Below are positions 18,685 through 62,329 of a stretch of 64,000 bases of DNA, piece by piece. The notes beneath the pieces are model-generated. The model was given only the letters and a program-made list of their open reading frames with translations. It made no database searches and was not told the DNA's origin. The DNA comes from Eutreptiella sp. 'Long Island Sound 2002' (taxonomy: Eukaryota; Protista; Euglenida): contig OZ038378.1 in assembly GCA_964036045.1 (NCBI GenBank), forward strand, positions 6,200,001 to 6,264,000. Reading direction: 5' to 3'. Position 1 is the first letter of the stretch. Each line of letters begins with the position of its first letter. The position numbers and the translations under genes were made by a program.

Positions 18685-19452
<768 letters not shown>

Positions 19453-24034: not shown

Positions 24035-24349
24035 GGCAAGATGCACGGGTTTCTGCGCATGTACTGGGCCAAGAAGATCCTTGAATGGACCCCCAACGCA
24101 GCGGAGGCCCTGAAAATCAGCATTTACCTCAACGATAAGTTTTCGCTGGATGGGCGGGACCCCAACGGGTACGTGGGCTGCATGTGGTCCGTGTGCGGTG
24201 TGCATGACATGGGCTGGACCGAGCGCCCCGTCTTCGGCAAGATCAGGTACATGAACTACAACGGGTGCCTCCGGAAGTTCAAGGTGGCCGACTTCGTGCG
24301 GCGCATGGGCGTGACTGCAAAGCCTCAGCCCAAGCCCAAGAAGAAGTAG
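24035..24349 (+). CDS. phr: Class II CPD photolyase, exon 4 (FAD-binding C-terminus)
   Basis: CTCTCAG|GGC acceptor. Reads [58 protein letters not shown], then TAG. The four exons total 1584 nt = 527 aa plus stop, in frame. Confidence 0.95.
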
Positions 24350-31758: not shown

Positions 31759-31780
31759 CTTTCTCAGTGGCTATTTTTTT
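31759..31780 (+). other. Relict euglenid spliced-leader sequence
   Basis: CTTTCTCAGTGGCTATTTTTTT matches the core of the Euglena SL (ACTTTCTGAGTGTCTATTTTTTTTCG, recalled from memory) at 20 of 22 positions, 12 nt upstream of an ATG. Confidence 0.75.
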
Positions 31781-31792
31781 GTCATCTACAAA

Positions 31793-34446: not shown

Positions 34447-35000
34447 GTTGCTTCTTGTTCCAATTTTCAGTCGGGTACACAAAACAACATAGGCTCTCGA
34501 CAAAGAGTCACAATAGTAGTTTCCAAAAGGCTTATGCATTCAGAGGTGATTGTAATATATTGTAGAGAATTTTGCTGAACAAAGTTCCTTTGTTCATTCG
34601 TGCGATGTCCCTGTAATGTTGTGTGTTCCATGTTCCATGGATGTTTTATGTTCTTGCAGCGGCGGAATATACTTTCTGTGACAGAGTTTCCCAGTTCCAT
34701 AGTCTGTTTTAAATTTAGCTGATCCTCACTACCTGTCAGATGCGCCACCACAGCCATTGTGGGATCATTGTGGGAACTGGACAGGTCTGAACCTTGAGTC
34801 CAAGAGGATCTCGAATACCATATGCTACACCAGCTCATCTTTGTCTGGGACAAAAACCAATCTCCTTTCTGTGACAGAGTTCATTTGCTTAAGATTATGG
34901 CTGTTGTGCCAAGTCGGGTTCGTTGTTTGCCCTGCAATGGATCATCATTGTTGTCGCCTCCTTGTCTGGCAGTGAAACCAGGAAAGTGAAGTCTGGTTAC
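34447..35000 (+). repeat. Leader segment of the satellite family; second copy at 50017-50588
   Basis: GTTGCTTCTTGTTCCAATT...GTGAAGTCTGGTTAC is present at both loci with small indels. Confidence 0.9.
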
Positions 35001-41000: not shown

Positions 41001-41042
41001 GCGCAAATAATCATTGGCACACGCTCACCGATTGCGTACTAA

Positions 41043-42319: not shown

Positions 42320-45300
42320 TAAAGGCTGTCGCTGGAATGCCCGTCTGGACATCTTCTCATCCGATATACGCCACTTCGATGCAGGAGGTACACACTCGTC
42401 TGATACAGCGAGTCCATCCATGAGCAACTTCCCCGCCCGAGTCGATGAGGGGCCCAACGAGTTGGCGAAATTCGGTGAAGCTGCCAAAAACCAAAAATTT
42501 GGGTGCAGCGCTGATTGAGGAATGCCATGCAAAATGGAATGATAACTACACAGCTAACGCCGCATAATGGGCTTTTCTTTGTGCCAACCTCCAGAATTTT
42601 GATCCCGCCCTCCAAGTTGGGTAAAACGCGCCGCCGACTCGCTCGCCGACTCGTTGGCCACCAGGTTTGCCGACTCGGGGCATGGGGGGGGGGGGCTTGC
42701 ATGAGGAATGAGCCACAGCTCTGGGCACTGACACAATGCATTGCGGTAGTAGCAAACAGGGTGCTCATGCGGCGTGCGCGCCATGCGTACATTGGGGTTG
42801 TACCAAGACCCCACTCCAAAACCATCCATTTATTGCTAGTTCTGGAGCGCTGCAAGGGACCCCATTTTGAGGGCTTCCGAGGAGAGCGCATTGGCCGAGC
42901 TTTTAGCCCAACAGCGGGCAGGATGTGCGGATGGTACCCGCGCGGTCACAGGGCTCAGGGGCGTTCAATGATACTCTCATTGCGAGGTCGAAGATCAGTG
43001 AACCCAACAATGACAATCATGGAGGAACGGTTTCCAATGACAAAGGCACAGTTACTGACGCTAATGCTCATTCAGAACTCCCAAGAGGCCTTGCCGTCTG
43101 ACCAGATCCCATCCATGAAACATTCCATAGCTCACAGGGCGAACTCAAGGCAACATTCAGAACTGGTTTCAAGCCGACCCGGGGGCATACGGTAGCTCAG
43201 TGTCCGTTGCTTCATATGCCCCAGAAAGGACCCAGTGTCCGTTTGGGTCGTGGTGTGACATGTCATGCAAGCCCTGAAGGGGAGGTTTGGGAGGGTCTGA
43301 GGGCGGGGCTGCAGCGACCTGCCCCTGCGTGCAAACACGTTTCTCCCACCCCATTTTGCACGCCGCCCACAAAAGTTTGATCGTTGTTTGGGAAGGTAGA
43401 CAACGTGGTCCCGGGTAGATTCTGTGCCACGCAAACGCCAGAGGGCAGACTGTTGTCTAGAACACCGGTGCCCAAGGCAGCGAGCTGGCACAAGGACCGA
43501 GTTTACCTTTGCCCATGAGTAAGACAAACAGGTCAGTGTTAGCACCCACGACCAGTTTCTACGCCACTGTGAAGTTCCTCACGGTGAGCGAAACTTCGGT
43601 TTTCGATGCTTAAAATTATTGTGCCGCCAGGCTATGCACTCTGCTATCTTTCTCAGCCTACACTCTTTTGTGCATGCTGTGCGGTGGTTTCCAACTGCAG
43701 AATCTGGTGTCAGAGTCAGCTCATCCTGCACTATGTGTGTCAGATCCGCTACCGCAGTCATTTGTGGGATCATCGTAGCATTGGACAGCTGTGCACCTTC
43801 AAGGGTTGTCTAGACTGGTGAGCAGGCCACACCAGCTTGTCTTTGTCTGCCCCACCCCTTCAACAAGAAACATTGAATTTACGACACGTGAAACTCTCAC
43901 AATCTTTAGATTCTGCAGCCACGTCTATCCCTTGTGTCTGCCCTAATCAGTAGCTGCTCGGAATCGACGCAATTCATGAATTCACGATAGCCTGCTGCAT
44001 ATCTCACGATATTGGCAAGCAGCAGTAGCGTCACAGGGTGTGTGCATGCATGCCACACCAGAGTCTTCCCTTGAAATACTTCATTGCGATGACTCTTGGG
44101 TGTGTGCAAATAATCATTAGCACACGCTCACCGATTGCGTACTAAAGGCTGTCGCTGGAATGCCCGTCTGGACATCTTCTCATCCGATATACGCCACTTC
44201 GATGCAGGAGGTACACACTCGTCTGATACAGCGAGTCCATCCATGAGCAAACTCCCCGCCCGAGTCGATGAGGGGCCCAACGAGTTGGCGAAATTCGGTG
44301 AAGCTGCCAAAAACCAAAAATTTGGGTGCAGCGCTGATTGAGGAATGCCATGCAAAATGGAATGATAACTACACAGCTAACGCCGCATAATGGGCTTTTC
44401 TTTGTGCCAACCTCCAGAATTTCGATCCCGCCCTCCAAGTTGGGTAAAACGCGCCGCCGACTCGCTCGCCGACTCGTTGGCCACCAGGTTTGCCGACTCG
44501 GGGCATGGGGGGGGGGGGGGGGGGCTTGCATGAGGAATGAGCCACAGCTCTGGGCACTGACACAATGCATTGCGGTAGTAGCAAACAGGGTGCTCATGCG
44601 GCGTGCGCGCCATGCGTACATTGGGGTTGTACCAAGACCCCACTCCAAAACCATCCATTTATTGCTAGTTCTGGAGCGCTGCAAGGGACCCCATTTTGAG
44701 GGCTTCCGAGGAGAGCGCATTGGCCGAGCTTTTAGCCCAACAGCGGGCAGGATGTGCGGATGGTACCCGCGCGGTCACAGGGCTCAGGGGCGTTCAATGA
44801 TACTCTCATTGCGAGGTCGAAGATCAGTGAACCCAACAATGACAATCATGGAGGAACGGTTTCCAATGACAAAGGCACAGTTACTGACGCTAATGCTCAT
44901 TCAGAACTCCCAAGAGGCCTTGCCGTCTGACCAGATCCCATCCATGAAACATTCCATAGCTCACAGGGCGAACTCAAGGCAACATTCAGAACTGGTTTCA
45001 AGCCGACCCGGGGGCATACGGTAGCTCAGTGTCCGTTGCTTCATATGCCCCAGAAAGGACCCAGTGTCCGTTTGGGTCGTGGTGTGACATGTCATGCAAG
45101 CCCTGAAGGGGAGGTTTGGGAGGGTCTGAGGGCGGGGCTGCAGCGACCTGCCCCTGCGTGCAAACACGTTTCTCCCACCCCATTTTGCACGCCGCCCACA
45201 AAAGTTTGATCGTTGTTTGGGAAGGTAGACAACGTGGTCCCGGGTAGATTCTGTGCCACGCAAACGCCAGAGGGCAGACTGTTGTCTAGAACACCGGTGC

Positions 45301-48283
45301 CCAAGGCAGCGAGCTGGCACAAGGACCGAGTTTACCTTTGCCCATGAGTAAGACAAACAGGTCAGTGTTAGCACCCACGACCAGTTTCTACGCCACTGTG
45401 AAGTTCCTCACGGTGAGCGAAACTTCGGTTTTCGATGCTTAAAATTATTGTGCCGCCAGGCTATGCACTCTGCTATCTTTCTCAGCCTACACTCTTTTGT
45501 GCATGCTGTGCGGTGGTTTCCAACTGCAGAATCTGGTGTCAGAGTCAGCTCATCCTGCACTATGTGTGTCAGATCCGCTACCGCAGTCATTTGTGGGATC
45601 ATCGTAGCATTGGACAGCTGTGCACCTTCAAGGGTTGTCTAGACTGGTGAGCAGGCCACACCAGCTTGTCTTTGTCTGCCCCACCCCTTCAACAAGAAAC
45701 ATTGAATTTACGACACGTGAAACTCACACAATCTTTAGATTCTGCAGCCACGTCTATCCCTTGTGTCTGCCCTAATCAGTAGCTGCTTGGAATCGACGCA
45801 ATTCATGAACCCACGATAGCCTGCTGCATATCTCACGATATTGGCAAGCAGCAGTAGCGTCACAGGGTGTGTGCATGCATGCCACACCAGAGTCTTCCCT
45901 TGAAATACTTCATTGCGATGACTCTTGGGTGTGCGCAAATAATCATTGGCACACGCTCACCGATTGCGTACTAAAGGCTGTCGCTGGAATGCCCGTCTGG
46001 ACATCTTCTCATCCGATATACGCCACTTCGATGCAGGAGGTACACACTCGTCTGATACAGCGAGTCCATCCATGAGCAACTTCCCCGCCCGAGTCGGTGA
46101 GGGGCCCAACGAGTTGGCGAAATTCGGTGAAGCTGCCAAAAACCAAAAATTTGGGTGCAGCACTGATTGAGGAATGCCATGCAAAAAGGAATGATAACTA
46201 CACAGCTAACGCCGCATAATGGGCTTTTCTTTGTGCCAACCTCCAGAATTTTGATCCCGCCCTCCAAGTTGGGTAAAACGCGCCGCCGACTCGCTCGCCG
46301 ACTCGTTGGCCACCAGGTTTGCCGACTTGGGGCGTTGGGGGGGGGGGGGGGGGGCTTGCATGAGGAATGAGCCACAGCTCTGGGCACTGACACAATGCAT
46401 TGCGGTAGTAGCAAACAGGGTGCTCATGCGGCGTGCGCGCCATGCGTACATTGGGGTTGTACCAAGACCCCACTCCAAAACCATCCATTTATTGCCAGCT
46501 CTGGAGCGCTGCAAGGGACCCCATTTTGAGGGCTTCCGAGGAGAGCGCATTGGCCGAGCTTTTAGCCCAACAGCGGGCAGGATGTGCGGATGGTGCCTGC
46601 GCGGTCGCAGGGCTCAGGGGCGTTCAATGATACTCTCATTGCGAGGTCGAAGATCAGTGAACCCAACAATGACAATCATGGAGGAACGGTTTCCAATGAC
46701 AAAGGCACAGTTACTGACGCTAATGCTCATTCAGAACTCCCAAGAGGCCTTGCCGTCTGACCAGATCCCATCCATGAAACATTCCATAGCTCACAGGGCG
46801 AACTCAAGGCAACATTCAGAACTGGTTTCAAGCCGACCCGGGGGCATACGGTAGCTCAGTGTCCGTTGCTTCATATGCCCCAGAAAGGACCCAGTTTCCG
46901 TTTGGGTCGTGGTGTGACATGCCATGCAAGCCCTGAAGGGGAGGTTTGGGAGGGTCTGAGGGCGGGGCTGCAGCGACCTGCCCCTGCGTGCAAACACGTT
47001 TCTCCCACCCCATTTTGCACGCCGCCCACAAAAGTTTGATCGTTGTTTGGGAAGGTAGACAACGTGGTCCCGGGTAGATTCTGTGCCACGCAAACGCCAG
47101 AGGGCAGACTGTTGTCTAGAACACCGGTGCCCAAGGCAGCGAGCTGGCACAAGGACCGAGTTTACCTTTGCCCATGAGTAAGACAAACAGGTCAGTGTTA
47201 GCACCCACGACCAGTTTCTGCGCCACTGTGAAGTTCCTCACGGTGAGCGAAACTTCGGTTTTCGATGCTTAAAATTATTGTGCCGCCAGGCTATGCACTC
47301 TGCTATCTTTCTCAGCCTACACTCTTTTGTGCATGCTGTGCGGTGGTTTCCAACTGCAGAATCTGGTGTCAGAGTCAGCTCATCCTGCACTATGTGTGTC
47401 AGATCCGCTACCGCAGTCATTTGTGGGATCATCGTAGCATTGGACAGCTGTGCACCTTCAAGGGTTGTCTAGACTGGTGAGCAGGCCACACCAGCTTGTC
47501 TTTGTCTGCCCCACCCCTTCAACAAGAAACATTGAATTTACGACACGTGAAACTCACACAATCTTTAGATTCTGCAGCCACGTCTATCCCTTGCGTCTGC
47601 CCTAATCAGTAGCTGCTCGGAATCGACGCAATTCATGAACCCACGATAGCCTGCTGCATATCTCACGATATTGGCAAGCAGCAGTAGCGTCACAGGGTGT
47701 GTGCATGCATGCCACACCAGAGTCTTCCCTTGAAATACTTCATTGCGATGACTCTTGGGTGTGTGCAAATAATCATTAGCACACGCTCACCGATTGCGTA
47801 CTAAAGGCTGTCGCTGGAATGCCCGTCTGGACATCTTCTCATCCGATGTACGCCACTTCGATGCAGGAGGTACACACTCGTCTGATACAGCGAGTCCATG
47901 CATGAGCAAACTCCCCGCCCGAGTCGGTGAGGGGCCCAACGAGTTGGCGAAATTCGGTGAAGCTGCCAAAAACAAAAAATTGGGAGGCAGCACTGATTGA
48001 GGAATGCCATGCAAAATGGAAATGATAACTACACAGCTAACGCTGCATAATAGGCGTTTCTTTGTGCCAACCTCCAGAATTTCGATCCCGCCCTCCAAGT
48101 TGGGCAAAACGCGCCGCCGACTCGCTCGCCGACTCGTTGGCCGCCAGGTTTGCCGACTCGGGGCGTGGGAGGGGGGGGGGGGGGCTTGCATGAGGAATGA
48201 GCCACAGCTCTGGGCACTGACACAATGCATTGCGGTAGTAGCAAACAGGGTGCGCATGCGGCGTGCACGCCATGCGTACATTG

Positions 48284-49062
48284 GGGGGAGCCTCACGCGC
48301 AGTGCGCGCGCAGTGCGCGCGCAGTGCAACTATTTGGGGGTCCGGCCGTATCAGAGCCCCATACTTTGGGATACTAGGGGCCCCTAGGGGCATCATGGTG
48401 ACCCCTAGCAGAGGTTTTGACTTCTGATTTTGTCCCCCTTTGTTTGGGTGTGCCATAGGTGATTGAGTAGATCTTGCGGTTCGGCAAGGGTAACCACTTA
48501 CTAAGGGATGAGGAAAGTGTAATTATTCAGGATGGGTTTGATGGCCAACCATTCTCTGAAGGCGGCAGTGAAGCGCCAACACTGCAGCCTGCAATTGACC
48601 GTTTGCACCGTGAGAAAAGAGAGAGAGAGAGGTCAAGAAACAAGCAAAACATGCGCAGCACGTCCTAGAAAAGCGGCAACGCACACTGGATGCTTTTTGT
48701 GTTGCTGCGCCCCCTCGGGCCGATGTGGCTTCGTCCAGCTCCAATCTCCCTCAACCCTCTCAGTCCTTGCAACCCCCTGTGGCTACACAATCTCAACCCC
48801 AATCCGATTCTAACCGCAAGGGAAAGGAGAGAGCCCCTTCCTCACAACCGAAACCACTCATGTGGCAGTGGGGCATCGTAAGGAACATGTGTGTGTTATG
48901 TTAAGGGAAGGTAGTTTGCAACTTTCTTGAGCTGGGGCAGTTTGGGTCACCTAATTCTAAGGGCGTTTCCAAGGGGTGTGCTTGGGGGCTCTTCGGGGGG
49001 AACATAGTCTAAAAGTAGCGCGCAGTGCGCGTGCAGTGCGCGCGCAGTGCAAAGATTCCCCC
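48284..49062 (+). mobile_element. MITE or internally deleted DNA transposon in array unit 7
   Basis: The empty site is ACATTGGGGTTGTACC. Here it reads TTG|GGGGGAG...GATTCCCCC|TTG. AGTGCGCGCGC repeats lie near both ends. Ends are shared with 61744-62317. Confidence 0.88.
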
Positions 49063-50016
49063 TTGGGGTTGTACCAAGACCCCACTCCAAAACCATCCAT
49101 TTATTGCTAGTTCTGGGGCGCTGCAAGGGACCCCATTTTGAGGGCTTCCGAGGAGAGCACATTGGCCGAGCTTTTAGCCCAACAGCGGGCAGGATGTGCG
49201 GATGGTACCCGCGCGGTCACAGGGCTCAGGGGCGTTCAATGATACTCTCATTGCGAGGTCGAAGATCAGTGAACCCAACAATGACAATCATGGAGGAACG
49301 GTTTCCAATGACAAAGGCACAGTTACTGACGCTAATGCTCATTCAGAACTCCCAAGAGGCCTTGCCGTCTGACCAGATCCCATCCATGAAACATTCCATA
49401 GCTCACAGGGCGAACTCAAGGCAACATTCAGAACTGGTTTCAAGCCGACCCGGGGGCATACGGTAGCTCAGTGTCCGTTGCTTCATATGCCCCAGAAAGG
49501 ACCCAGTGTCCGTTTGGGTCGTGGGTGTGACATGTCATGCAAGCTCTGAAGGGGAGGTTTGGGAGGGTCTGAGGGCGGGGCTGCAGCGACCTGCCCCTGC
49601 GTGCAAACACGTTTCTCCCACCCCATTTTGCACGCCGCCCACAAAAGTTTGATCGTTGTTCGGGAAGGTAGACAGCGTGGTCCCGGGTAGATTCTGTGCC
49701 ACGCAAACGCCAGAGGGCAGACTGTTGTCTAGAACACCGGTGCCCAAGGCAGCGAGCTGGCACAAGGACCGAGTTTACCTTTGCCCATGAGTAAGACAAA
49801 CAGGTCAGTGTTAGCACCCACGACCAGTTTCTACGCCACTGTGAAGTTCCTCACTCCACCACAGGATTCCTTCAAAAGTAAGTGTGTATACTCTTTTGAA
49901 TCCCTGTTTTGCCATCTATCTCGTCATTCTTTTGGGTTTTATATTGTCGGATGAGCGAGCACCGCAACGTGATAGTTTTGTGCAATTTGAGTGTTTGTCA
50001 ACCTCCAAAAGTATTT

Positions 50017-50783
50017 GTTGCTTCTTGTTCCAATTGTCAGTCGGGTACACAAAACACCATAGGCTCTCGACAAAGAGTCACAATAGTAGTTTGCAAAAGG
50101 CTTATGCATTCAGAGGTGATTGTTATATATATGGTAGAGAATTTTGCTGAACAAAGTTCCTTTGTTCATTCGTGCGATGTCCCTGTAATGTTGTGTGTTC
50201 CATGTTCCATGGATGTTTTATGTTCTTGCAGCGGCGGAATATACTTTCTGTGACAGAGTTTCCCACTTCCATCACCTGGTTTCAGACTCAGCTGATCCTC
50301 ACTACCTGTCAGATTTGCCACCACAGCCATTATGGGATCATCGTAGAACTGGACAGGTCTGAACCTTGATTCCAAGAGGTTCATCTCGAATACCATATGG
50401 TGAGCAGGCTGGCTACACCAGCTCATCTTTGTCTGGGCGAAAAACCAATCTCCTTTCTGTAACAGAGTTCATTTGCTTAAAGTTATGGCTGTTGTGCCAA
50501 GTCGGGTTCGTTGTTTGCCCTGCAATGGATCATCATTGTTGTCGCCTTCTTGTCTGGCAGTGAAACCAGGACAGTGAAGTCTGGTTACGGTGAGCGAAAC
50601 TTTGGTTTTCGCTGCTTAAAATCATTGTGCCGCCAGGCTATGCACTCCGCTATCTTTCTCAGCCTACACTCTTTTGTGCATGCTGTGCGGTGGTTTCCAA
50701 CTGCAGAATCTGGTGTCAGAGTCAGCTCATCCTGCACTATGTGTGTCAGATCCGCTACCGCAGTCATTTGTGGGATCATCGTA
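50017..50783 (+). repeat. Diverged second copy of the leader plus the first ~215 bp of the array unit, interrupted at 50783
   Basis: Matches 34447-35217 and stops at GGGATCATCGTA. The expected continuation (TAGC...GGACAGCT..CCTTCAAGGG) resumes at about 58943. Confidence 0.9.
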
Positions 50784-50927
50784 CCACCCTCCCCCCTTGT
50801 TCAAGGAACGCCTATCGTGGGGGCTATTATGATGTCCAACACTCTCATTGAGTGATACAACGCCCCCACACCTGCCTTTGTTACTGTCTCTGTCCTTCCT
50901 CCTGCGCGATTTTGCGGGAGCGGAAGG

Positions 50928-52537
50928 ATGTCGCAACGTAAATCAGGTTCCCAAGGCCGCCGCAGTGCCAAAGACCTGATGAGCACACACCGTACTACCG
51001 GAGAGCCGGTATTACCAGCTGCTGAATCACAGCAGTTAGTGGCCATGACGCCATTATTGGCCCCTGACTTTGTCGTGCAGAACGAGTTCTGGCTGCAAGG
51101 AGGCATTCCAGATGCGGAGCACAGTTCTGAAAAATCTCTGTTCTTGACGAGGTTGAAACCGTTGACCAGATGCGAGCCGTGTTCCATGGCGCCAGTCCCA
51201 ATTTGTTGCTGGTGGATCAAGTGGATGGTGAGAACTTTCCTGTCTTTGTCGAGTACTTGAACAAAATCACCAAGCTGCTCACCACTTTGGGACGCCTGGA
51301 TATTGTGCTGTTCAGCAAAGCCACTGAGGTGGACAGCGCCCAGTTTCTGATGGCGGCCATGAAGTTAAAAGATAAGCTGCCAGACTTGCCTGTCCGCATC
51401 GGCGAATGTGATCGGCTGGTCGGGTCGGTCGCAAAATCGGAGTCCTATGACGTGTGGGTGGCGACCTCCACCCACAGATCCAGAATGGAGGCAGCATCCG
51501 TTTATTACAAAATGTTCAACATGCGGTTGCCGGGCGAGGGCACTGATGGGGTCCTGTTTGCAGATCCGGATATCACTTACCCCATGCTCATCATTCAATA
51601 CGCATTTTCGTGGGAGGATGAGCTCATGCAGTTTTTGGGGTTAGATAAGTCGGAGGTGACGATATGTCCTGGAATTGACACAGCTTCCAGCCGATATCTG
51701 TACCTGGAGACGGATTTTGCCACAGCGAAGAAGGTCATCGAGACGTTTGGCCGGTACCCGCGATTTGCTTTGCTTCCATTGAAGTGGTATACAGGGGAAC
51801 AGGTGAACTCAGCGGAGTACAGGGTTGAGGTCACCATGGCGAAGGATTTTCAGGCGCGACATCTGAAATATTTCTACTCGTACGTCATGGCAGCATTTTG
51901 GGATTTGGGCGATCTGCTGGGGGGCAAACATTTTTCTGCCCAAATAATGCATTCCAAGCGCATCCGCCTGGGTTTATCGAAGAGGGGCTATGAGTTCGCG
52001 AAGGAGAAAATGGCAGGCTGGCTGCAAGACTTGGGGCTGGAGCTCCGTGATGAGCAGTCGGGCAAGCAGCTGTCTGGATCCTCTGCGGCGACCATGACAC
52101 AAGCCAGTGAAACCCCAGAGGCATGGGGCCCCTGTGAGTCCGTATTCCTAACGAATGTCCCCCCGTACTGGAGGGACAGCGTACTGCGACAGGTGTTGTT
52201 AACGCAAGGAACAGGCCAGGAGAATTTCGTGTTGGACAAGTGCAGATTTCACGTGGGGGACATCAGAAGCAAAACGTGGATGCTGACGGGACCCAAAGCC
52301 TCCGCTCTGGTGGGGAAAGTCTTGCAGGCGGCCCAGGCGGGGACGCTCATAGTCCCGATTTCCAGGCAGGAGTATATGTCTCGCAAGTCTACCATCCAAT
52401 CCCGGGGTGGAAAGGGTGGTGGCAAAGGAGCGGGCAAGGGATTGTCGGTTTCGGAGCGGCAAGCGGAGCCTATGGAGGTCAACGATAGTGACGTGGGCGC
52501 GCTGAAGATGTTCAAGAGGAAACGCGACGACTCTTAG
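50928..52537 (+). pseudogene. LINE ORF1, with one frameshift in the A-run at ~51130-51134
   Basis: Adding one A joins MSQRKSG...HSSEK to ISVLDEVETVDQMRAVFHG... The C-terminus has RGGKGGGKGAGKG and KRKR. The stop lies 5 nt before the ORF2 ATG. Confidence 0.75.
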
Positions 52538-52542
52538 TCATC

Positions 52543-55500
52543 ATGACGATCCTTAGCCATTGGCCGTCGGTTCGGACGGCGATAGGGACACTCAATGTCA
52601 ACGGTTGGCTACGGCGACCCAGAGAGCCGAAACGGAGCCTAGAGCAAGTCCTGCGGCGGGAGACCAGGCCCCGCGGGGAGCTGCGGCGGGTATCAGTAAT
52701 GCGCATCGTCAAAAAACATCACCTGGACGTGCTGGGACTGCAGGAGACACACTTGCAAGACCAGGAGATCATCGACTCGCAGCACTGGTGGCTGCGACGC
52801 CATGGGTTTTCCGCCCGGTTCAATATACAAACCACCCCAGCGGATAAGGGATCCACGGGAATTCTCTGGCGAGACGCTAAGTGGGAACACGTGTCCTCGG
52901 AAGATATTGGGCCCCGGTTTTTATTGTCTCAACTCCGAGCTCGAGCGGGGGGGGAGGTGCGCTTTCTGGCAGGCCACTTTTCCTGCGAGCCCAATGAGCG
53001 CAGACAACAGTGGCAGAAAGTGGAGGCCAAACTGGCCCCCCTTCCGCCGCTTCCGCTGGTCATACTGGCGGACCATAACAGCGTGATGGTGCCAGGGTCC
53101 GACACGGCGGTGGTCAGCAAGGAAGTACCGGCAGTGGTTCGCTCACGTCAGGTGGAGGGGTCGATTTTGACATCCTTGGCAGTGGAAGATGTATGGGTGC
53201 ACCTCCACGGGGAACGGAGGGCAGAGTCGTTGGAGGGCTTTACATTTCCGTCGCTGCAGCGGCGGATAGACCGGGTGCACCTGCCCACGGCAGTGCTCAA
53301 TACTGTGCGGTCTGTATACACGGTGACAACGCCCTCGGATCACAAGGCGGTGGTTCTCCAGTTGGGGCCACAGGAGGAGCCGGGGGGCGCCCCGCGGTTC
53401 AGGTTCCCATTGGAAATTCTGGAGTCTCCGGATGCGGCGGCAACGTTGCGAGAGGTCCTGGAGGCCCACAGCCAAGTGCCAGGCCCAATTGAGTCGTGGT
53501 GGGATGGTGTGCGGAGTTTGTTGCGAGAATTTGCGGGGCGTTGGCGCAGGGAGAACCCTTCTTCGGGCTTCACGGAGCTGCAAGCTCTCGTGCGTGAGAG
53601 CACGCCTCTGCGTTTGGCGCCAGGGGCGTGGGAGTTTCTGCGGGACTTGGGTTACGAGGAAACGTCGATCGCGTTGGCGTATCAGCGCCTGGTGCGGCTG
53701 CAGGCGCAGGAAAAGCAGGAAGAGTTTGAGGAGCGCATGCTCACGCGTCTCCGGGCGCAGCTGCAACCCCAAGAGGCTCGGGCCAAGGAGGCCTCGGAGA
53801 GACGTAAGCGTGTTCATGAGATGGTGAGGCAGTTACGTGACCGGCTGTATCTACAGCGAGTGAGGGACAGCAGGGGGGTGGTGCAGGAGACAAGTAAAAC
53901 GATTGCGCGGGCCTTGCATGACTACTGGGGCGGGGTAATGGGGGGAGGGGGGAGCACGCTGGAGGAGTGCCAGCGGTACGTCTCGTCGCTGCCCATCCCT
54001 GAGCGAGTGCGTCGCGCTATGCCGTTACTGTTTAGGGAGCTGTCCAAGTAGCTAGTAAAAACGGCGTTAGAGCGTCTCAAGCGGGGGTCCGCACCTGGTA
54101 TGGATGGGTTGCCAGCAGAGGTGTACCAGGCTTTTCCAGAAATTTTTATACCCAAATTGTACCAGGCTATGGTGTTGTTCCTGCGCAGGGGGGGGGTGCC
54201 AGAAGAATGGGCGACCTCGCTGATGAAGTGCTTGCCGAAATTTGCTGGGGCCGAGTGCCCGAAGGACTTGCGCCCGCTGGCGCTGCAAAACACGTGTGTC
54301 AAATGGATTTCAACAACAATTATGCTGCAGGTAATGGACGCACTGCAACAGATTATTCCCCCCGAGCAGAAAGGGTTTTTGCCGGGACGGCAGATGGTAG
54401 ACCATTTGGTCTTTGCGCGAGCGGAATGGGATAGGCTCCCGGAGCAGGCCATGGTGGCTATCGACTTTCAAAAAGCGTACGACTCTGTGTCGTTTGCGTT
54501 AATGGAGTGTACGCTTCTCTTCTTGGGGTTGGGGGTGGAGTACGTGCGGCTGCTCCTCTCTGTGATGTCAGCACCAATTTTGTTTTGTGTGGGGCGATCG
54601 TTTGAGCCAACGGTGGTGTTGCACCCGCGGTCGGGGATACGCCAGGGCGACCCTTTGTCCCCCCTGCTGTTTGATGTAATAACGGTGTTATTAATTTATG
54701 ACATCAAGTCCCTCAAGATCGAATTGGTGCTGCTGCTGTATGCAGATGATATTTTGCTTTGTGTACCTGGGCGGGGGTCTAAACAGGAAAAAGATTTGAG
54801 GGCGGCACTATATCGCCTGGGGATCTTTGGCTATTTTTCCGGACTGAAGGTGAACGCGTCAAAAACATATGCAGTAGTTAAGGTGCGGGAGGGGGAGGCG
54901 TCGCCGTCGACGCTGGCGGGGGTCGTCGTGAAGCCTCATGTGAAATATCTAGGATCGCTGTTGGGGAATGTGTCAGAAGAAAAAGCATATGCACCAGCGA
55001 TCGCCAAAATGATGGCTCGGGCACGGGCAATGGCGGCCCTGCCGCTGGGTTTGATGGAGAAATCTGTTTTGTTTGCCTCTTGGGTGGCACCGGTTTGCTA
55101 CCTCACGGCGAGAGCCTACCGTCCCACCGAGCATGTTTGCTCACAACTGGATTTGGTGCATAGGACGGCGTTGGGGCTGACTAACTGGAACCTCACCATG
55201 CCAATACTGTTGCTGCCCCCATCGGAGGGGGGATTGGGGCAGGCAAGCCTGTCGGCTTATGCGCAATGGGCGCATAGTCATTCCTTTGTTACGTATGTCC
55301 TGCGGCCGGGCCGGTTTGCGGAACAGCACTCGGGTCCATTCCGGCGGTGGGCAGCGGCACAGGGGCTGTTAATGGAAGAGGAAGTCCTCCCCTATCTGCA
55401 GTTAGGCCCGGTGCCCCTGTCCAGACCTTCTTTTTTGCAGGGCTGCCTGAAAGCCTACTCCGTCACGCGACGGTCGGGGGGGGGCGTGCCGCCCCCCCCG

Positions 55501-57268
55501 GAGCATCGGTTGGGGCATATGCCGGTATGGCATAATGCGCAATGACCTGTCGCTAACCTACCATAGTCCATTGTTGGTCAAGCGGGGGGTCTATCGATGG
55601 TACGACCTGGTGGAGGGAGGGGGGATTCCAGTGCGGTTTGTGGACATGTTGGCGCCCACGTGGCAGCCGGTTTACCTACGGCGGGTGTCGGAAGTTATTG
55701 AGTCGTATCAGCGACCAGTAACGTATACGGGTCCAGAGTTGGGGCGGTGGGCGTATACATGGACCTCCAGGAAAATGCTGCTGTATATGCAGCACCAGCG
55801 CCGGCATGCAGCCCGGCAACCGCCAGAAGTGTGGCGAGCATTTGAACGGTTGTACCTGCCGAGATGGGACAAAGACTTTGTTAGACGATGCTTGTGGAAA
55901 AAACTCCCACTAGGCACCAGAATGGAGAGGCTGGGGGGAAAATTGTGCCCGCTGGACAATAAAGTAGAGGACCATGAACATGTTTTTAGGCACTGCTTCT
56001 TCTGTAACTTTATGTTTGACACGGTCCGCCGGGCATTTGGGTTGGTGGAGAGCGAGCAGGGGAGGGTGGAACCGAGTCGCCTGTTAAGGGACCATCCCCT
56101 GCTGTCTCTGACCTCTACCCAGGGGCTAATCTTGTGGGCGGGTTCCAAGGTGCAGTGGGGTCTTCGGTGCCGGGCGAAGTACCAACGGGTGGCGCCGGTG
56201 CTGGACGAGTTCATTGCGGGCTGGGCGGGGCTCTTGCGGGCTTGGAGGGCAGAAAAGGACATGTCGTGCTCCAAGCGCGACCTCTGCAGGTTTGTGGAAA
56301 TTTTGGATGGGTGGTTTGTGAATCCACAAATGCCACGAATTTTTCCAGCACAGCCACAGCAGCCCACGAATGCCAAGCCAGTCAAGCAGCGGGATAAGTT
56401 AAAGGAGAAGGAAGAGAAGTGGGGCAAGTATAGAGATGCCGAGGTCCAGCGGCTACAAGCTCTGGCGGCAGATGGGTGGACCGTGGCATATTCGGATGGC
56501 TCGGCGAAAACGGTGAGGGGGTGGGCACAGGCGGGGTATGGGGTGTGGTACGCGCGGGGGTCTTCCCGTAATTGCGCGGCTCATGTGCCAGTGGGGGAAC
56601 GACAGAGCGTCAGCAGGGGGGAACTTCAGGGGGTCCTACATGCACTGTTGCACAGATCGCCAGGTGAGCGGTTAGTGGTTGTCTTAGACTCGGAGTACGT
56701 GTACAAGGGGATCGTGGAGTGGTCGCTGAAATAGCGCCGACATGGGTGGCGCACAACCGGCAGAGAAGTTGGCCACAGGGATTTGTGGGAAACAATTTTG
56801 TGGGAGCGGGAGAGGGCGGGGGAGCAAGTGCAACTCCGCTGGATACCATCCCACCTGGGGGTGCAGGGCAATGAGGAGGCGGATGCACTGGCGGAGGCAG
56901 GCAGGGGCTTACATCCGCATAATGAGGAGTCTTTTCCGAAGAGAGTGAGAGTGGAACCACAGTGGGAAGCATTGGGGCTGGAGGAGATGGCGTCGGGGGG
57001 AGAGGCCACAGACAGTGACATGGCGAGCTCAGGAGAGTCCGGCGGGACATTGTCCTCAGGGTCTGAAGGGGTGTCGCTGAGCGACTTGGAGAGTGACGAA
57101 TTTTCGACAGACGTGAGTGACAGGGCGCGGGACAGGGCCCTGGGGGTGGAATCAGAAATGGACAGCGAGTCGGTAGACAGCCTGGAAGCGGGGAGTGGGG
57201 GCTCAGAGTTTAGTACGGATGTCAGTGACAGCCGGAAGAGACGGAGGTTTCAGTCTGTGCATACCTGA
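52543..57268 (+). pseudogene. LINE ORF2 (APE endonuclease, reverse transcriptase, zinc finger, RNase H, acidic tail) with 3 lesions
   Basis: APE: TLNVNG, LQETH, LADHN, RRIDRV, SDH. RT: APGMDG, LRPLAL, QKGF, DFQKAYDSV, GIRQGDPLSP, YADD, KYLG. Zinc finger: CPLDNKVEDHEHVFRHC. RNase H: YSDGS, RGEL, LDSEY, WIPSH..GNEEADALA. Lesions: TAG at 54049, a frameshift at ~55540 and TAG at 56732. Confidence 0.93.
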
Positions 57269-57997
57269 CCTTGCGACCCTGACCCAGACGCTCAGAGCTC
57301 GCATGGACAATCTGTGGCGGCGCCTCCGGCGCCGTATTCGTGGACTAGCTGTGGCGGCGGCTTCGCCGCCTAATCTATGACGATGAACTGAATGAGCAGG
57401 CATAGGTCTGTCGGTGGGGGCCTATCGCTGAACTTTCCACTGTTTATGTCCAAGGAACGCCTATGTCGAAGTGACACTAGGCGTTGATTCCGTCAATTTC
57501 TGCGCCTTTGATTTTGGCGCTGCATTTTTCAATTCGTTCTGCTGTGTGCCAGGTGTGCTTCTCGTTACCTTGGGTGTGAGATGCACGTTGTTCATATTCT
57601 GTGCCAAGGCAGCTCTCTTGGCCAAGAGGACTGCCGCATGTGACATGGCTGAGATAAGCGATACCTTCGACAGGTCCATGTCGCAACAGTATTGTGAATG
57701 GATTAGAGGCAAAGTTGATGAGCGACACTGTCTGACAGGAGTCCCATCCCTTGCCCAGACCATCAGGAGTTTGCAAACATGGTGGCTGCAGCCTGTGGAC
57801 CCGTAATGTTCAATGTTTCCAAACTGTATGTGCCAGTTTTTGGTAACCAATGTTCGCAGCTCATGAGTGTTTTGTTGCATATGTCAACTCTTTGCTTGTG
57901 TACCACCATCTCCGCTTCAAACCCCCTGAGGACGGTCTACACCTGTATCATGCAAGTTGCGGTGTGTAAGCAACACCCTTGTCCAAGCAACACTAGG

Positions 57998-58863
57998 CCG
58001 AGGAGGGACGACAAATGCACCCGCACAACCAGCGGGGGCTGCATAAGAGGCCGGTGTGGAGCCCATGTGGGCAGATCTGGGTTTGGAGGAAATGCCCAGT
58101 GAAGTTTCGTCGTCAGGGGAGTCCAGTGGAGAGAACAGTGACCTGGAGGGGGGATGGGACTCAGAGACTGATGCATTGTTATCTGGGTCGGGGGACTTAG
58201 GCTCCACGACGGGGAGCTCAGGGTCCTGCACGGAATCGTGTCAGTCGGGGGGATCGGAGTGTAGTACGGAAGTAAGTGACAATCCAAACCGGAAGAGACA
58301 CCGGGGGTTGGGGGGGAGGTCAGAATGAGACGCTATAGGGGAGGAGCATACCTGAAACACGTGTGACTCCCACGTCACATCGCTTTTGGTGGCGAAGGCG
58401 GCAGACACGCTGCCGGAGGTCGACCTACGCGGTCGATCTGAGCCTTGAAGGTCTGCACTAGGTGGATACCGGAGGAGAAGCCGCTGGGAGCAACGGGGGG
58501 AGGTCAGACCTGGTGGTACTGAAAGCCAGTAAACAACACATCGGATAATAGCATATCGGAAACACGCTTGTCTCCCACGTCACAGATCATGGGTTCGAAT
58601 CCCGGTGGGCAGGCTGCTGGGGGTTCTTTTTACCGGCAGCCCATTCCTTTAGCCCATTCCTTCTCAACCCAGTTCTTGCTGAGGGCCAGGGAGGGATACC
58701 TGACCATCCCAGACGAACTGTGGCGGCGCCTCCGGCACCGTATTTGTGGAAGAACTGTGACGGCGGCTATGCCGCCATTCTTGGGACTGCTTGGGAATGC
58801 ACTGAATGCGAGGGCATAGGTCTGTCGGTGGGGACCTATCGCTGAACTTTCCACTGTTTATGG
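57998..58863 (+). mobile_element. 5'-truncated copy of a related LINE subfamily, or a LINE-SINE chimera
   Basis: Exact 15-bp TSD CCAAGCAACACTAGG at 57983-57997 and 58864-58878. 58056-58328 (VEPMWADLGLEEM...STEVSD..RKR) is homologous to the ORF2 C-terminus. The last ~155 nt match the 3' end of the full element. Confidence 0.85.
58542..58612 (+). promoter_or_regulatory. tRNA-derived cassette with Pol III A and B boxes (not a functional tRNA)
   Basis: A-box-like TAGCATATCGG at 58549-58559 and B-box GGTTCGAATCC at 58592-58602, at tRNA-like spacing. The CTCCCAC loop resembles tRNA-Gly(CCC), but the anticodon and acceptor stems do not pair. Confidence 0.7.
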
Positions 58864-58942
58864 CCAAGCAACACTAGGTGTTGGTTCCGTTAATTTCTGG
58901 TCATTTACCGTTGCTTGGACAGGCCGAGGGGGGGGGGGGGGT

Positions 58943-59325
58943 TAGCCCCGGACAGCTCTGTACCTTCAAGGGTTGTCTAGACCGGTGAGCAGGCCACGCC
59001 AGCTTGTCTTTGTCTGCCCCACCCCTTCAACAAGAAACATTGAATTTACGACACGTGAAACTCTCACAATCTTTAGATCCTGCAGCCACGTTTGCATCAT
59101 CATCTGCACACCCTGCCAGCTGTTGGGCTAAAAACTCGGCCAATGGTCTCTCCTCGGAAGCCCTCAAAATGGGGTCCCTTGCAAGGCTCCAGACACTAAA
59201 TGGATGGTTTTGGAGTGGGGTCCTGGTACAACCCCACACCAGCTCATCTTTTTCTGGGCCAACAACAAACATCCTTTCTGTGACAAAGTTCATTTGCTTA
59301 AGGTTATGGCTGCTGTGCCATGTTG
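58943..59325 (+). repeat. Continuation of the interrupted satellite copy, containing a ~140-bp array segment in inverted orientation
   Basis: 58950-59091 matches the unit in forward orientation. About 59100-59237 is the reverse complement of about 36043-36176. About 59238-59320 matches the leader near 34828-34910. Confidence 0.85.
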
Positions 59326-60404: not shown

Positions 60405-60850
60405 TGTGGTGCGATTTCTGGACATGTGTCACGGCCCAGCCGAGACTCGTGCATGACGCAATTTTGGAAAATGCATCACGGCCCTGCCTAGCCTTGTCCG
60501 TGGCGCATTTTGTGGTCAGGCCTCATGGCCCGGTGCAGCCTGGTCCATGGCACATTTTTGGAAGTTGCGTGATGGCCCGGCCCATGCTGGTGCGTGACGC
60601 ATTTTTTGGTCATGTGTAACGGCCCGGCCCATACTTGTGCATGAGGCATTTTCGGAAATGTGTGACGGCCCACCCCGAACTCGTGTGTGATGCCATTTTT
60701 GGACATGTATCACGGCCCGGCTCAAACTTTTGCGTGACACATTTTTGGGAAATGGCTCATGTCCTAGCCCAGACCGGTGCGTGACGAATTTTGGGACATG
60801 CGTCACAACCCGGCCCAAACTCGTGCGTGACGCATTTTTGGGAGATGGCA
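60405..60850. repeat. 46-47-bp minisatellite, ~9 units, each with an internal inverted repeat
   Basis: The ACGGCCC-like anchor occurs at 60431, 60478, 60525, 60572, 60619, 60665, 60712, 60759 and 60805. The best unit reads ATGCGTCAC-N20-GTGACGCAT. Confidence 0.9.
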
Positions 60851-61743
60851 ACCACACGTTGCCATTGGTATCAAGCACCTTCGAATAGTTGGGTATGCGG
60901 CCCGTCTGTAGCCTGGCACATTTGCACCGCCCCTCACCCTAAATTGGTTGGGGTTTCATGGGCTTGGGTATCGCACACATGGGTGCTGGGAACCTCAGGG
61001 GTGGGTGTCTTGAGGCAGTTCTTGGGTTAGAGAACACCATAGGGTTTGTGGTACGCAATGCGCTTTCTGTTTGAAACATGTATCGGCAAGATGTGTTGGG
61101 TTAAGTTTGGGCCAGGAGGGTTAATACATATGCCGGTTTGCCCGAATAGGCCGGTCACGGGGTGGGGCAGAGGATATGTGGGTTATGGTGTCAGGGCAGG
61201 CATTGTGTAGTGGACAAACCACGGGGTATTTGGTTTGTCGCGGGTTTCGGCCCGAGGATATGTGGTTTAAGGTTCTACGGCTGGGATTTGCTGCCCAAAT
61301 GCCCATTTTCAAGGCTTCTTGGGACCTTACAGGGGCCAAATTGGCTGCAAGCAGGCTCAAAATGGACTCATTTCACTTGATTGTGTACACCAAATGGTCC
61401 ACGATCCACGATGGGAAAACAAGTTTTTGACCCATGAGAAGGTAACACCCCCAAGCATACACCTATATTTCAAAGTCCAACCGTTGTGAGCACAATGTAA
61501 AACAAAGTAGCTCTTGTGAGAGAAACGGGCACATGCACGTGTGGTAGACAACAAATGCTACTTATTTTCGCAACTTGCACTCCCACCGGTACACGGGAAG
61601 AATGCGAAGGTAACACAGCAATGCTACACCTGTATTTCAAAGTCCAACTAGTATGAGCACAAGGCAAAAGAAAGAAGTTGTCATGAAAAAAGCAAGCACA
61701 GGCTTTTTTCCAATCTTTGGAAACACAATGGGGCATATTCTAG

Positions 61744-62317
61744 GGGGGCGCCTCAAGCGCAGTGTGCGCGCAGTGCAACTATTTGGGCGTCTGGCCGTAC
61801 TAGAGACCCATACTTTGAGATACTAGGGGCCCCTAGGGGCATCATGGTGACCCCTAGCGTAGACTTTGACTTCTAATTTTGTTCCCTTTGTTGGGGACCC
61901 CCGAGAATGCAGGGGTGGGCCTTGGGCCTTGTAGGTTAAGCCTAGTGGTCTCCCACCTCAGGACCCCTACACTCAATTGTTTTACCTACTTATTGTGGGC
62001 CTACCTTTTAACTGATTCTGAATTCAGTTGCTTGGCCATGCTGGCCAAGCCATATCCTGTGTCTGGCCCAACCTAGTTGCCCCAGATTCCTAACCAACTC
62101 CATTGCATGTCAAAGTGTGCACATGAAGTGCTTGGGACTATCCTTGAGGCCAGACTGATGCCAGTTTTCATTATAAAATCAATTGCAACTTGCAGTTTGG
62201 GTCACTTAATTCTAAGGGCATTTCCAAGGGGTGTGCTTGGGGGCTCTTCGGGGAGAACATAGTCTAAAAGTAGCGCGCAGTGCGCGCGCACTGCGCGCGC
62301 AGTGCAAAGACTCCCCC
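61744..62317 (+). mobile_element. MITE, same family as 48284-49062
   Basis: TAG|GGGGGCGCC...GACTCCCCC|TAG. It shares ~165 bp on the left and ~135 bp on the right with the other copy, but the interior differs. Confidence 0.88.
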
Positions 62318-62329
62318 TAGTGTTGTTAG

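What the first reader, a model, noticed from the sequence alone, without database searches (positions are those of the whole stretch)
50784..58942. Candidate system: sequence-specific LINEs that target the terminal motif of a small inverted-repeat element
Seen: two independent insertions, each with its own exact TSD (14 and 15 bp), lie in near-identical targets, CCCTTGTT|CAAGGAACGCCTAT and CCCTTGT|CCAAGCAACACTAGG. Both are followed within ~20 bp by CTAGG(C/T)GTTG(A/G)TTCCGT(C/T)AATTTCTG. The left TSD boundaries, which mark the first-strand nick in target-primed reverse transcription, differ by at most 1 nt. The same motif occurs inverted at about 58910-58921 next to a G-run, so the ~630-bp empty host has C-rich and G-rich inverted ends. 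Known: Xenopus Tx1L/Tx2L insert specifically into the DNA transposons Tx1D/Tx2D, while the site-specific elements known in Euglenozoa (SLACS/CZAR/CRE) use a restriction-like endonuclease and target SL RNA genes. Inference: this is an APE-type family that uses a MITE as a multicopy safe-haven target.
Basis: partly seen in the sequence, partly recalled or inferred. Interest (0 to 1): 0.85.

Follow-up and report, generated by a model that had tools for sequence, protein, structure and literature searches.

The report
Site-specific LINEs targeting MITE ends
In a Euglena-like alga, several related jumping genes (LINEs) insert at one exact spot inside the end-repeat of a small cut-and-paste transposon, which is a protist example of a lifestyle known so far from frog and crocodilian Tx1 elements.

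Summary
Window 50784-58942 is one 629-bp element with terminal inverted repeats (TIRs), flanked by a TA duplication and inserted into a 1.83-kb tandem repeat whose sister units show the empty site. It carries two LINE insertions with exact target-site duplications (TSDs) of 14 and 15 bp. One is a full-length, decayed family-A copy (50816-57450). The other is an 866-bp 5'-truncated copy (57998-58863) of a different family, C.

I fetched 11 more insertions from other contigs of a public assembly of this genome. Twelve of the 13 insertions lie in the same TIR-derived motif. Families A, C and D are nicked at YTGY|CCAAGC and family B at TTGK|ATAAGCTAC. TSD lengths, truncation points and host copies all differ, so the insertions are independent. 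Empty host copies exist in the loci and in read contigs.

The ORF2 has APE, RT and RNase H domains. Its nearest named relatives are Tx1 and L1 ORF2, and no tree could be built. The target matches no Rfam RNA family.

This is a new protist member of a known kind (Tx1L/Tx1D, Tx1-Mar/Mariner). Earlier stages of this scan noted other target-specific LINEs in this genome (a satellite, (CA)n).

The parts
50782..50783 (.). Left copy of the TA target duplication of the host element
   Evidence: The empty site in sister repeat units reads ATCGTA|GCATT with a single TA.
50784..50815 (+). Host left TIR: a C-rich run, then TTGT|TCAAGGAAC (unit 1). It includes the left TSD copy of LINE1 (50802-50815).
   Evidence: Homologous to the left TIRs in L010, L009, L003, L006 and L012.
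50816..57450 (+). LINE1: family A, full length (6635 bp), decayed. ORF1 is about 50928-52537 with a frameshift. ORF2 has APE at 52543-54051 (ending in an in-frame TAG), RT at 54052-55545, then a frameshift, and RNase H at 55535-57268 with an in-frame stop at 56732. The 3' UTR ends in ...CTGAACTTTCCACTGTTTATG.
   Evidence: ORFs; Pfam Exo_endo_phos, RVT_1 and RNase_H; 98.3% identical to the near-intact copy in L007.
57399..57432 (+). Conserved 3'-UTR hairpin of the LINE tail. The stem keeps pairing through a G-C to C-G swap in family B.
   Evidence: fold_alignment: pair 116/133 is GC in 4 sequences and CG in 2.
57451..57464 (+). Right TSD copy of LINE1
57465..57982 (+). Host interior. It starts with unit 2 and the shared CTAGGCGTTGATTCCGTCAATTTCTG block. 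Near 57965-57982 begins a direct copy of the left-end units.
   Evidence: Read depth shows it is multicopy.
57983..57997 (+). Left TSD copy of LINE2 (CCAAGCAACACTAGG), preceded by CCCTTGT
57998..58863 (+). LINE2: an 866-bp 5'-truncated copy of family C (end of ORF2 plus the 3' UTR)
   Evidence: 87% identical over 862 bp to positions 6031-6868 of the L006 LINE.
58864..58878 (+). Right TSD copy of LINE2
   Evidence: Contig joints 57982->58864 share 15 bases.
58879..58942 (+). Host right end: a loop, then the right TIR (GTTGCTTGGACAGG..., 14 G, T), which is the inverted copy of the left TIR. With the subterminal direct unit it forms a 14-16 bp stem.
58943..58944 (.). Right copy of the TA target duplication of the host
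50571..50783 (+). Left flank: part of a 1.83-kb tandem-repeat unit (matches unit positions 396-607)
58950..59091 (+). Right flank: the same repeat unit continues (unit positions 613-754)

Best explanation
A group of related L1/Tx1-like LINE families in a euglenid genome retrotransposes sequence-specifically into the TIR and its subterminal copies of a family of small (160-730 bp) TA-flanked TIR elements (MITE-like). Their ORF2 has APE endonuclease, RT and a cellular-type RNase H, and they have no poly(A) tail. The TSD left edges show that the first (bottom-strand) nick falls between ...CCYTTGY and CCAAGC... for families A, C and D, and between ...CTTGK and ATAAGCTAC for family B. This position is 4 nt inside the C-run of the TIR, or the same position in the direct copy near the other end. 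The second nick is variable, 9-16 bp downstream, and gives the TSDs. Inferred steps: the APE domain reads the motif; the RT recognises the conserved hairpin-bearing 3' tail, which would explain the shared tail and the tail-only copies; and landing in a multicopy, non-essential transposon end keeps insertions harmless while splitting the host's TIR.
For: Element anatomy comes from Pfam: Exo_endo_phos, RVT_1 and RNase_H, and the YADD motif is present. Thirteen insertions have readable junctions: window x2, L001, L006, L007, L008, L009, L010, L011, L003 x2, L004 and L012. Twelve lie in the motif. TSDs of 9-16 bp differ in length and run on into host-specific sequence, the 5' truncation points differ, and the contigs differ. 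Seven of the nine A/C/D tails are followed directly by CCAAGC. That hexamer has a frequency of 4.2e-4 per position in the 279 kb held, which puts the chance probability below 1e-20 (plus my own arithmetic). Empty targets: L003 14946-15672, six unoccupied TIRs at the far end of LINE-bearing host copies plus one more at L008 16383-16357, each preceded by TA, and 33 uninterrupted YTGYCCAAGC sites. Reads: contigs skip LINE2 precisely (57982->58864, 15 shared bases); 67 and 49 contig ends enter at 58864 from ...AAGCAACACCCTTGT; LINE-tail variants in three organisms or samples are each followed by CCAAGC or ACAAGC; and 82 contigs leave the G-run into unrelated flanks. Host as a transposon: the TA duplication with an empty paralogous site, and TA on both sides in L003, L006 and L012. 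Recent activity: L007 is full length, 98.3% identical to LINE1, and has a single frameshift in ORF2.
Against: One of the 13 insertions (L007, the youngest-looking full-length copy) is in a different sequence, C12-AAC|CCATAC, so specificity is strong but not absolute. No endonuclease assay was possible, so it is not shown that the APE domain, rather than RNA-target pairing or DNA structure, sets the site. No transposase-bearing partner of the host was found. The sample of 13 was drawn through ORF2-containing copies of one assembly. The read-depth data are contig word depths, not counts of independent events.
Confidence: 0.85

Rival explanations
1. The site is chosen by annealing or by DNA structure, not by endonuclease sequence readout. 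Read-through LINE transcripts carrying downstream host sequence would anneal to nicked targets (as proposed for R1 and R2), or the near-palindrome CTTG-NN-CAAG with its hairpin and C/G-runs would attract a rather unspecific nuclease.
For: The target core is a near-palindrome. At the right end it lies in a 14-16 bp stem (z about -2.5). The LINEs have no poly(A) tail. The off-target copy in L007 also follows a C12 run.
Against: Left-TIR targets have no nearby pairing partner, yet they are hit at the same base. The subterminal targets have no C-run. Family B and family C use two different nick positions in the same host subfamily, which fits protein readout better.
Confidence: 0.12
2. The association comes from amplification of composites. 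One or a few LINE-in-host composites would have been copied by DNA transposition of the host, segmental duplication or gene conversion, so the junctions would not be independent retrotransposition events.
For: The LINE tail plus the host right end has far higher contig depth (17,000-25,000 in X5) than the LINE body (about 150) or the flank (about 440). Hosts carrying a tail fragment may therefore have multiplied as DNA.
Against: The 12 junction pairs read here that have both TSD copies differ in TSD length (9-16 bp), TSD sequence, truncation point, LINE family, host subfamily, unit used and outer flanks. The 13th insertion, L008, has no readable 5' junction.
Confidence: 0.03
3. The host is not a cut-and-paste MITE but another kind of dispersed hairpin-ended repeat, moved by an unknown mechanism. 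The LINEs would still target it.
For: No transposase partner was found. The interiors of host copies are unrelated apart from about 60-90 bp at each end. The ends are unusual (long C/G runs, and a direct copy of the left end next to the right TIR).
Against: The host has 25-30 bp TIRs, and TA flanks both sides in four complete copies (window, L003a, L006, L012) and the one end read in five more (L001, L003b, L009, L010, L011), and one paralogous empty site with a single TA. This is the Tc1/mariner-Stowaway pattern.
Confidence: 0.12

Closest known systems
Tx1L / Tx1D of Xenopus laevis (Tx1 clade)
   Same: An APE-encoding LINE inserts at a specific site inside a non-autonomous DNA transposon, giving composite elements (PMC4494074, citing Christensen et al. 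2000). Tx1 ORF2 (P14381) is the best Swiss-Prot structural match of this ORF2 (E 1.9e-27).
   Different: This element is in a different eukaryotic supergroup (a euglenid). Its ORF2 carries an RNase H domain. The target is the TIR itself and its subterminal copy. TSDs are 9-16 bp. Several LINE families share the host. Sequence identity to Tx1 is only 18%, and mouse and human L1 ORF2 match almost as well.
Tx1-Mar families (and the SINEU elements they mobilise) of crocodilians, targeting Mariner-N4_AMi
   Same: LINEs, and the short elements they move, show target preference for a Mariner-type non-autonomous transposon, and tandem insertions sandwich a TSD (PMC4494074). Here the host has a TA duplication like Mariner elements, and L003 shows tandem insertions separated by the TSD.
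   Different: Those are animal Tx1-clade elements with a site internal to the transposon. Here the site is in the TIR, and two nick positions are used by different families.
R1, TRAS/SART and other target-specific APE LINEs (R1 clade); Keno, Kibi and Koshi (Tx1 clade)
   Same: The APE domain is thought to set the site, the targets are multicopy, and the 3' ends are precise and lack a long poly(A) (PMC4640811, PMC4494074).
   Different: Those targets are rDNA, telomeric repeats, snRNA genes or microsatellites. All reported lineages are animal. PMC4640811 states that reported target-specific APE LINEs lie in the Tx1 and R1 clades.
SLACS / CZAR / CRE of trypanosomatids
   Same: They are site-specific non-LTR elements in Euglenozoa.
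   Different: They use a restriction-like endonuclease and target spliced-leader genes. SLACS is a much weaker structural match (E 7.6e-14, rank 15). The target here matches no Rfam RNA family.

Membership tests
Target-specific APE-type non-LTR retrotransposon (the lifestyle of the Tx1 and R1 clades) | [quoted passage not shown] | tested here: met
   Pfam Exo_endo_phos (E 2e-7 and 6.7e-8) and RVT_1 (E 1e-19). The YADD motif is present.
Target-specific APE-type non-LTR retrotransposon (the lifestyle of the Tx1 and R1 clades) | Independent copies are inserted at the same nucleotide of a repeated target. The criterion in PMC4494074 is that more than 20% of flanks are of one sequence type. | tested here: met
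   12 of 13 insertions (92%) are in the motif, with different TSD lengths and truncation points. This is a small sample, not a census.
Target-specific APE-type non-LTR retrotransposon (the lifestyle of the Tx1 and R1 clades) | Unoccupied copies of the target exist | tested here: met
   L003 14946-15672, the empty TIRs, and the contig joints and loose ends.
Target-specific APE-type non-LTR retrotransposon (the lifestyle of the Tx1 and R1 clades) | The endonuclease itself cleaves the target sequence specifically | not testable with these tools
   This needs recombinant protein and a cleavage assay.
Tx1 clade (by RT phylogeny) | The RT domain groups with Tx1 references, apart from L1, in a tree | tested here: inconclusive
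   No reference clade sequences were available for a tree. By Foldseek, Tx1 ORF2 is first (E 1.9e-27), but mouse, Nycticebus and human L1 follow closely (4.5e-25 to 3.8e-24). The best PDB sequence match is human L1 ORF2p (4.5e-21, against 5e-13 for R2). The nearest database relatives outside the genome are L1-type elements with zf-RVT, at about 25% identity.
L1/Tx1 group | A Cys-His motif (CX2C...H...C) follows the RT | tested here: inconclusive
   The aligned homologues show CxxC...H....C. Family A has C-PL-D...H-VFRH-C with Asp at the second position in both copies.
Tc1/mariner-type (Stowaway-like) MITE, for the host | Terminal inverted repeats | tested here: met
   The 25-30 bp ends C(n)TTGT-CCAAGCAAC-G and their complement are seen in the window, L003, L006, L010, L011 and L012.
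Tc1/mariner-type (Stowaway-like) MITE, for the host | A TA target-site duplication, with a single TA at the empty site | tested here: met
   The window's filled site compared with two empty paralogous repeat units. TA is also seen on both sides in L003a, L006 and L012, and on one side in five further copies.
Tc1/mariner-type (Stowaway-like) MITE, for the host | An autonomous partner with matching TIRs that encodes a DD(E/D) transposase | not tested
   The assembly cannot be searched by DNA pattern with these tools, and none was seen in the 279 kb held.
Multicopy RNA gene as target (snRNA, 5S, tRNA, SL RNA) | The target matches a known RNA family | tested here: not met
   Rfam found nothing at the gathering threshold over the window, nor at E<=5 over 57300-59000. 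No tRNA was found. The loop's TTTCTG resemblance to the Euglena leader is not conserved among host copies.

The most novel reading that the evidence does not exclude
Sequence-specific targeting by an APE LINE arose independently of the animal Tx1 and R1 clades in a euglenid lineage, and it is diversifying along with its host. LINE families and MITE subfamilies co-vary: families A and D go with CCAAGCA[A/C]C ends, family B goes with ATAAGCTAC ends, and family C uses the second unit of the same hosts as B. The endonucleases would then be tracking the very TIR sequence that the MITE's transposase must bind. Each insertion splits a TIR, so the LINEs and their very abundant tail-only derivatives would act as parasites that disable another transposon.
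Probability: 0.3. Interest if true: 0.65.

Novelty: new member of a known kind. Interest (0 to 1): 0.5.

Why it matters
Target-specific APE-type LINEs have been reported only from the animal Tx1 and R1 clades (PMC4640811, PMC4494074). This is a well-supported case in Discoba, and at least one copy is nearly intact. Four related families cut two different bonds in closely related 16-nt motifs. That gives a natural set of variants for asking which endonuclease residues read DNA sequence, a question of interest for programmable insertion. It also documents a MITE family and TE-in-TE nesting rules that will help annotate the very repeat-rich euglenid genomes.

Tried and rejected
- **Known RNA gene as target.** Rfam at the gathering threshold and at E<=5, and ARAGORN, found nothing. 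The loop's TTTCTG resemblance to the Euglena spliced leader (which I recalled from memory; no hit) is not conserved among host copies.
- **HDV-like ribozyme at the LINE 5' end.** No Rfam hit at 50700-51100.
- **Host as a nonconventional-intron element.** The published signature N3-CAG...CTG-N5 (PMC12501133) does not fit the C-run ends.
- **LINE2 as a chimeric SINE with a tRNA head.** Rejected, because it is colinear with the 3' end of the family-C LINE.
- **Clade tree.** A tree with Tx1, L1, RTE and ingi references could not be built, because no reference sequences are reachable. I used Foldseek against Swiss-Prot and phmmer against PDB as proxies.
- **PDB search with the APE ORF.** No endonuclease hit.
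- **L005.** This LINE copy lacks its 3' end and was uninformative.
- **L008.** The 5' junction was not found.
- **Earlier notes and literature.** Searches of earlier notes for a mariner-type partner, and by sequence, were blank. A literature search for Euglena site-specific LINEs returned one unrelated paper.
Full report
**What is in the window.** The finding's coordinates (50784-58942) are exactly one inserted block. Upstream, the window holds a 1.83-kb tandem array (34986-49854). A further partial unit of that array is split: unit positions 396-607 lie at 50571-50783 and positions 613-754 lie at 58950-59091. Two intact units read ...ATCGTA|GCATT... at that point. The filled site reads ...ATCGTA|CCACCCTCCCCCC... 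on the left and ...(14 G)T|TA|GCCCC... on the right. The block is therefore an insertion with a TA duplication.

With the two LINEs removed, 629 bp remain. These 629 bp begin with a C-rich run followed by TTGT-TCAAGGAAC, and they end with the inverted copy GTTGCTTGG-ACAGG followed by a G-run.

**The two LINE insertions.** LINE1 (50816-57450, 6635 bp) is flanked by an exact 14-bp TSD. LINE2 (57998-58863, 866 bp) is flanked by an exact 15-bp TSD. LINE1 encodes an ORF1 with no Pfam match and an ORF2 with Exo_endo_phos, RVT_1 and RNase_H domains. It is broken by two frameshifts and two in-frame stops.

LINE2 is not a truncated copy of the same family. It is 87% identical over 862 bp to the last 840 bp of a different full-length element (L006, called family C here). 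It matches LINE1 only over the last ~150 bp, at about 82%. The two insertions in the window therefore come from two LINE families that chose the same motif.

**Related copies elsewhere.** The RT piece finds many relatives in one public assembly, which also contains this locus as L002. I fetched ten further loci through their called ORFs, besides L002 and read every LINE 3' end and, where possible, its 5' junction.

- **Family A** (95.9-98.5% identical to LINE1):
  - L001: TSD 13, CCAAGCACCGGGA.
  - L009: TSD 10.
  - L010: TSD 16.
  - L008: 5' junction lost; its 3' flank starts CCAAGCAC.
  - L007: full length, TSD 16.
- **Family C:** L006, full length, TSD 14.
- **Family D** (57% amino-acid identity to A): L011, TSD 16.
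- **Family B** (about 70% nucleotide identity to A): L003 (two insertions in tandem, 82 bp and 4334 bp, separated by the TSD), L004 and L012, with TSDs of 9-11 bp.

In families A, C and D the sequence left of the TSD ends in ...CCYTTGY (or C14-GT in L011), and the TSD starts with CCAAGC. In window LINE1 the 5' copy starts TCAAGG and the 3' copy CCAAGG. In family B the left flank is TA-C(7-11)-TTG(G/T) and the TSD starts with ATAAGCTAC.

After the first 6-9 bases, each TSD follows the sequence of its particular host copy. This shows that the duplicated bases are target sequence and not LINE tail.

The only exception is L007, which lies at C12-AAC|CCATACATC... in the region of a subtilisin-like gene. 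So 12 of 13 insertions are in the motif. Seven of the nine A/C/D tails are followed directly by CCAAGC, a hexamer with a frequency of 4.2e-4 per position in the 279 kb held. By my own arithmetic the chance probability is below 1e-20.

**The host element.** Complete hosts can be read in the window, L003 (two copies, one of them empty, 14946-15672), L006, L009, L011 and L012. They are 160-730 bp long. All share one architecture:

- TA, then a run of 6-15 C.
- TTGT, then [C/A][C/T]AAGC[A/T]AC-G (unit 1).
- A second similar unit (unit 2) and about 25 conserved bases.
- An interior that is unrelated between subfamilies.
- Near the other end, a direct copy of units 1 and 2 and the 25 bases.
- The inverted terminal unit, a G-run, then TA.

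The subterminal copy and the right TIR form a 14-16 bp stem. The LINE target therefore occurs inside the TIR and again in the subterminal copy. Window LINE1, L009, L010, L011, L012 and the two L003 insertions are in the TIR unit, and by their 3' flanks L004 and L008 are too. Window LINE2, L001 and L006 are in the subterminal unit.

Six unoccupied TIRs were seen at the far end of LINE-bearing host copies, and one more at L008 16383-16357. Each is preceded by TA. TIRs, a TA duplication and a paralogous empty site are the Tc1/mariner-Stowaway pattern. No transposase partner was found, so 'MITE' is a structural label here. The host matches no Rfam family and no tRNA.

**Genome-wide view from reads.** Logan contigs of four runs were laid on 57250-59050. 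Two runs are of one organism, one is of a second organism, and one is an estuary metagenome.

- Several contigs join 57982 to 58864 with 15 shared bases. These are host copies without LINE2.
- 67 contig ends (X5) and 49 (X6) enter at 58864 from ...AAGCAACACCCTTGT, and 37 (X6) leave at 57998 into the host sequence.
- LINE-tail variants ending ...CTATGG are followed by CCAAGCAAC. In organism B the sequence is CAAAGC, and in the metagenome CCAAGCAC.
- The family-B tail is followed by ACAAGCAAC.
- 82 contigs leave the host after its G-run into unrelated sequence.
- Summed depth is far higher on the LINE tail plus host right end (17,000-25,000 in X5) than on the LINE2 coding part (about 150) or the outer flank (about 440).

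These depths are assembler word depths and not copy numbers. They do suggest that tail-only or SINE-like copies greatly outnumber long copies, like the 82-bp copy in L003. They also leave open that some tail-bearing hosts multiplied as DNA.

**How it most likely works.**

- Shown:
  - The left TSD edge is fixed to within one base, and the right edge varies (TSDs of 9-16 bp).
  - There is no poly(A).
  - Full-length copies begin at the same base (CGTGGGGGCTATT...) in the window, L007 and L006.
  - The 3' UTR has three conserved hairpins. The last one keeps pairing through a G-C to C-G exchange between families.
  - L007 is nearly intact: the in-frame TAG seen in the window copy reads GAG in L007, and a single frameshift remains in its ORF2. 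The family was therefore active recently.
- Inferred from established target-primed reverse transcription:
  - The APE domain nicks the bottom strand at 5'-...GCTTGG^ACAAGG...-3'.
  - The RT, bound to the tail hairpins, primes from that end.
  - The top strand is cut 9-16 bp downstream.
- Protein readout: families B and C use two different bonds in the same host subfamily, and the left-TIR sites have no nearby pairing partner. Both facts favour protein readout over DNA structure, but this needs an enzyme assay.

**Comparison with what is known.** The AlphaFold model of the 1066-aa RT-RNase H ORF of L007 (pLDDT 82) matches Tx1 ORF2 of Xenopus best in Swiss-Prot (E 1.9e-27). Mouse, Nycticebus and human L1 ORF2 follow closely. 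R2, R1, jockey and SLACS match far less well. The RNase H part is 30-32% identical to cellular RNase H1. By sequence, the best PDB match is human L1 ORF2p. The nearest database relatives outside this genome are L1-type elements with zf-RVT, at about 25% identity. The element therefore belongs to the L1/Tx1 group, and I could not test membership of the Tx1 clade proper.

The lifestyle is known. Tx1L inserts into Tx1D, and crocodilian Tx1-Mar (with SINEU) into Mariner-N4_AMi (PMC4494074). Reported target-specific APE LINEs belong to the animal Tx1 and R1 clades (PMC4640811). A full-text search found no paper describing site-specific LINEs in Euglena.

Earlier stages of this scan noted other target-specific LINE families in this genome, one targeting a satellite and one (CA)n. 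I did not test those notes.

**Verdict.** This is a new, protist member of a known kind of system. Its useful internal variation is four families, two cleavage positions and co-varying host subfamilies.

Noticed in passing
window 57998-58863 (and L006 12692-13529): The 'tRNA-like' stretch and the 35-nt internal repeats in LINE2 are part of the ordinary 3' UTR of LINE family C. LINE2 is colinear with the L006 element over 862 bp (87%). It is therefore a plain 5'-truncated LINE, not a chimeric SINE.
   Followed up: partly
window 58775-58957: The LINE tail plus the host right end has about 100 times the contig depth of the LINE body. This points to very many tail-only or SINE-like insertions, or to DNA-level amplification of hosts that carry a tail.
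   Followed up: no
L007 5779-12437: Near-intact full-length family-A LINE (ORF1 451 aa; ORF2 in two pieces joined by one frameshift). It is inserted off-target at C12-AAC|CCATAC with a 16-bp TSD, between ORFs with Peptidase_S8 and PA hits. I did not check whether the frameshift is real or an assembly error.
   Followed up: partly
L003 10065-14520: Two LINE-B insertions (82 bp and 4334 bp) lie in tandem at the same TIR site, separated by the 9-10 bp TSD. An empty host copy follows directly at 14946-15672.
   Followed up: yes
L004 1569-7546: Three RT ORFs are spaced about 2.45 kb apart with no LINE tail between them. This looks like a tandem duplication of an internal LINE-B segment.
   Followed up: no
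window 34986-49854: This is a 1.83-kb tandem array of about 8 units (98-100% identical), interrupted at 41043-42318 and 48287-49062. The second interruption is a repeat with another copy at about 61743-62318. It starts with a G-run and carries GCGCGCAGTGC repeats.
   Followed up: no
window 50816-50834 vs L006 13549-13567: The first 19 nt of full-length LINEs (CGTGGGGGCTATTATGATG) resemble the host sequence that follows unit 2 (CGTAGGGACCGTAATAATT) at 12 of 19 positions. This may be chance or a trace of target-derived sequence.
   Followed up: no
window 56900-57700 (runs X1-X4): Estuary and sediment metagenomes hold 24-64% of the sampled words of the LINE 3' end plus host, so this or a closely related euglenid is present in those samples.
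   Followed up: no
window 60414-60841: A 47-bp tandem repeat with about 9 copies at 70% match.
   Followed up: no
window 31759-31790: A spliced-leader-like relic (TTTCTCAGTGGCTATTTTTTTG) lies in front of an ORF. Together with earlier notes, it was my basis for calling the genome euglenid.
   Followed up: no
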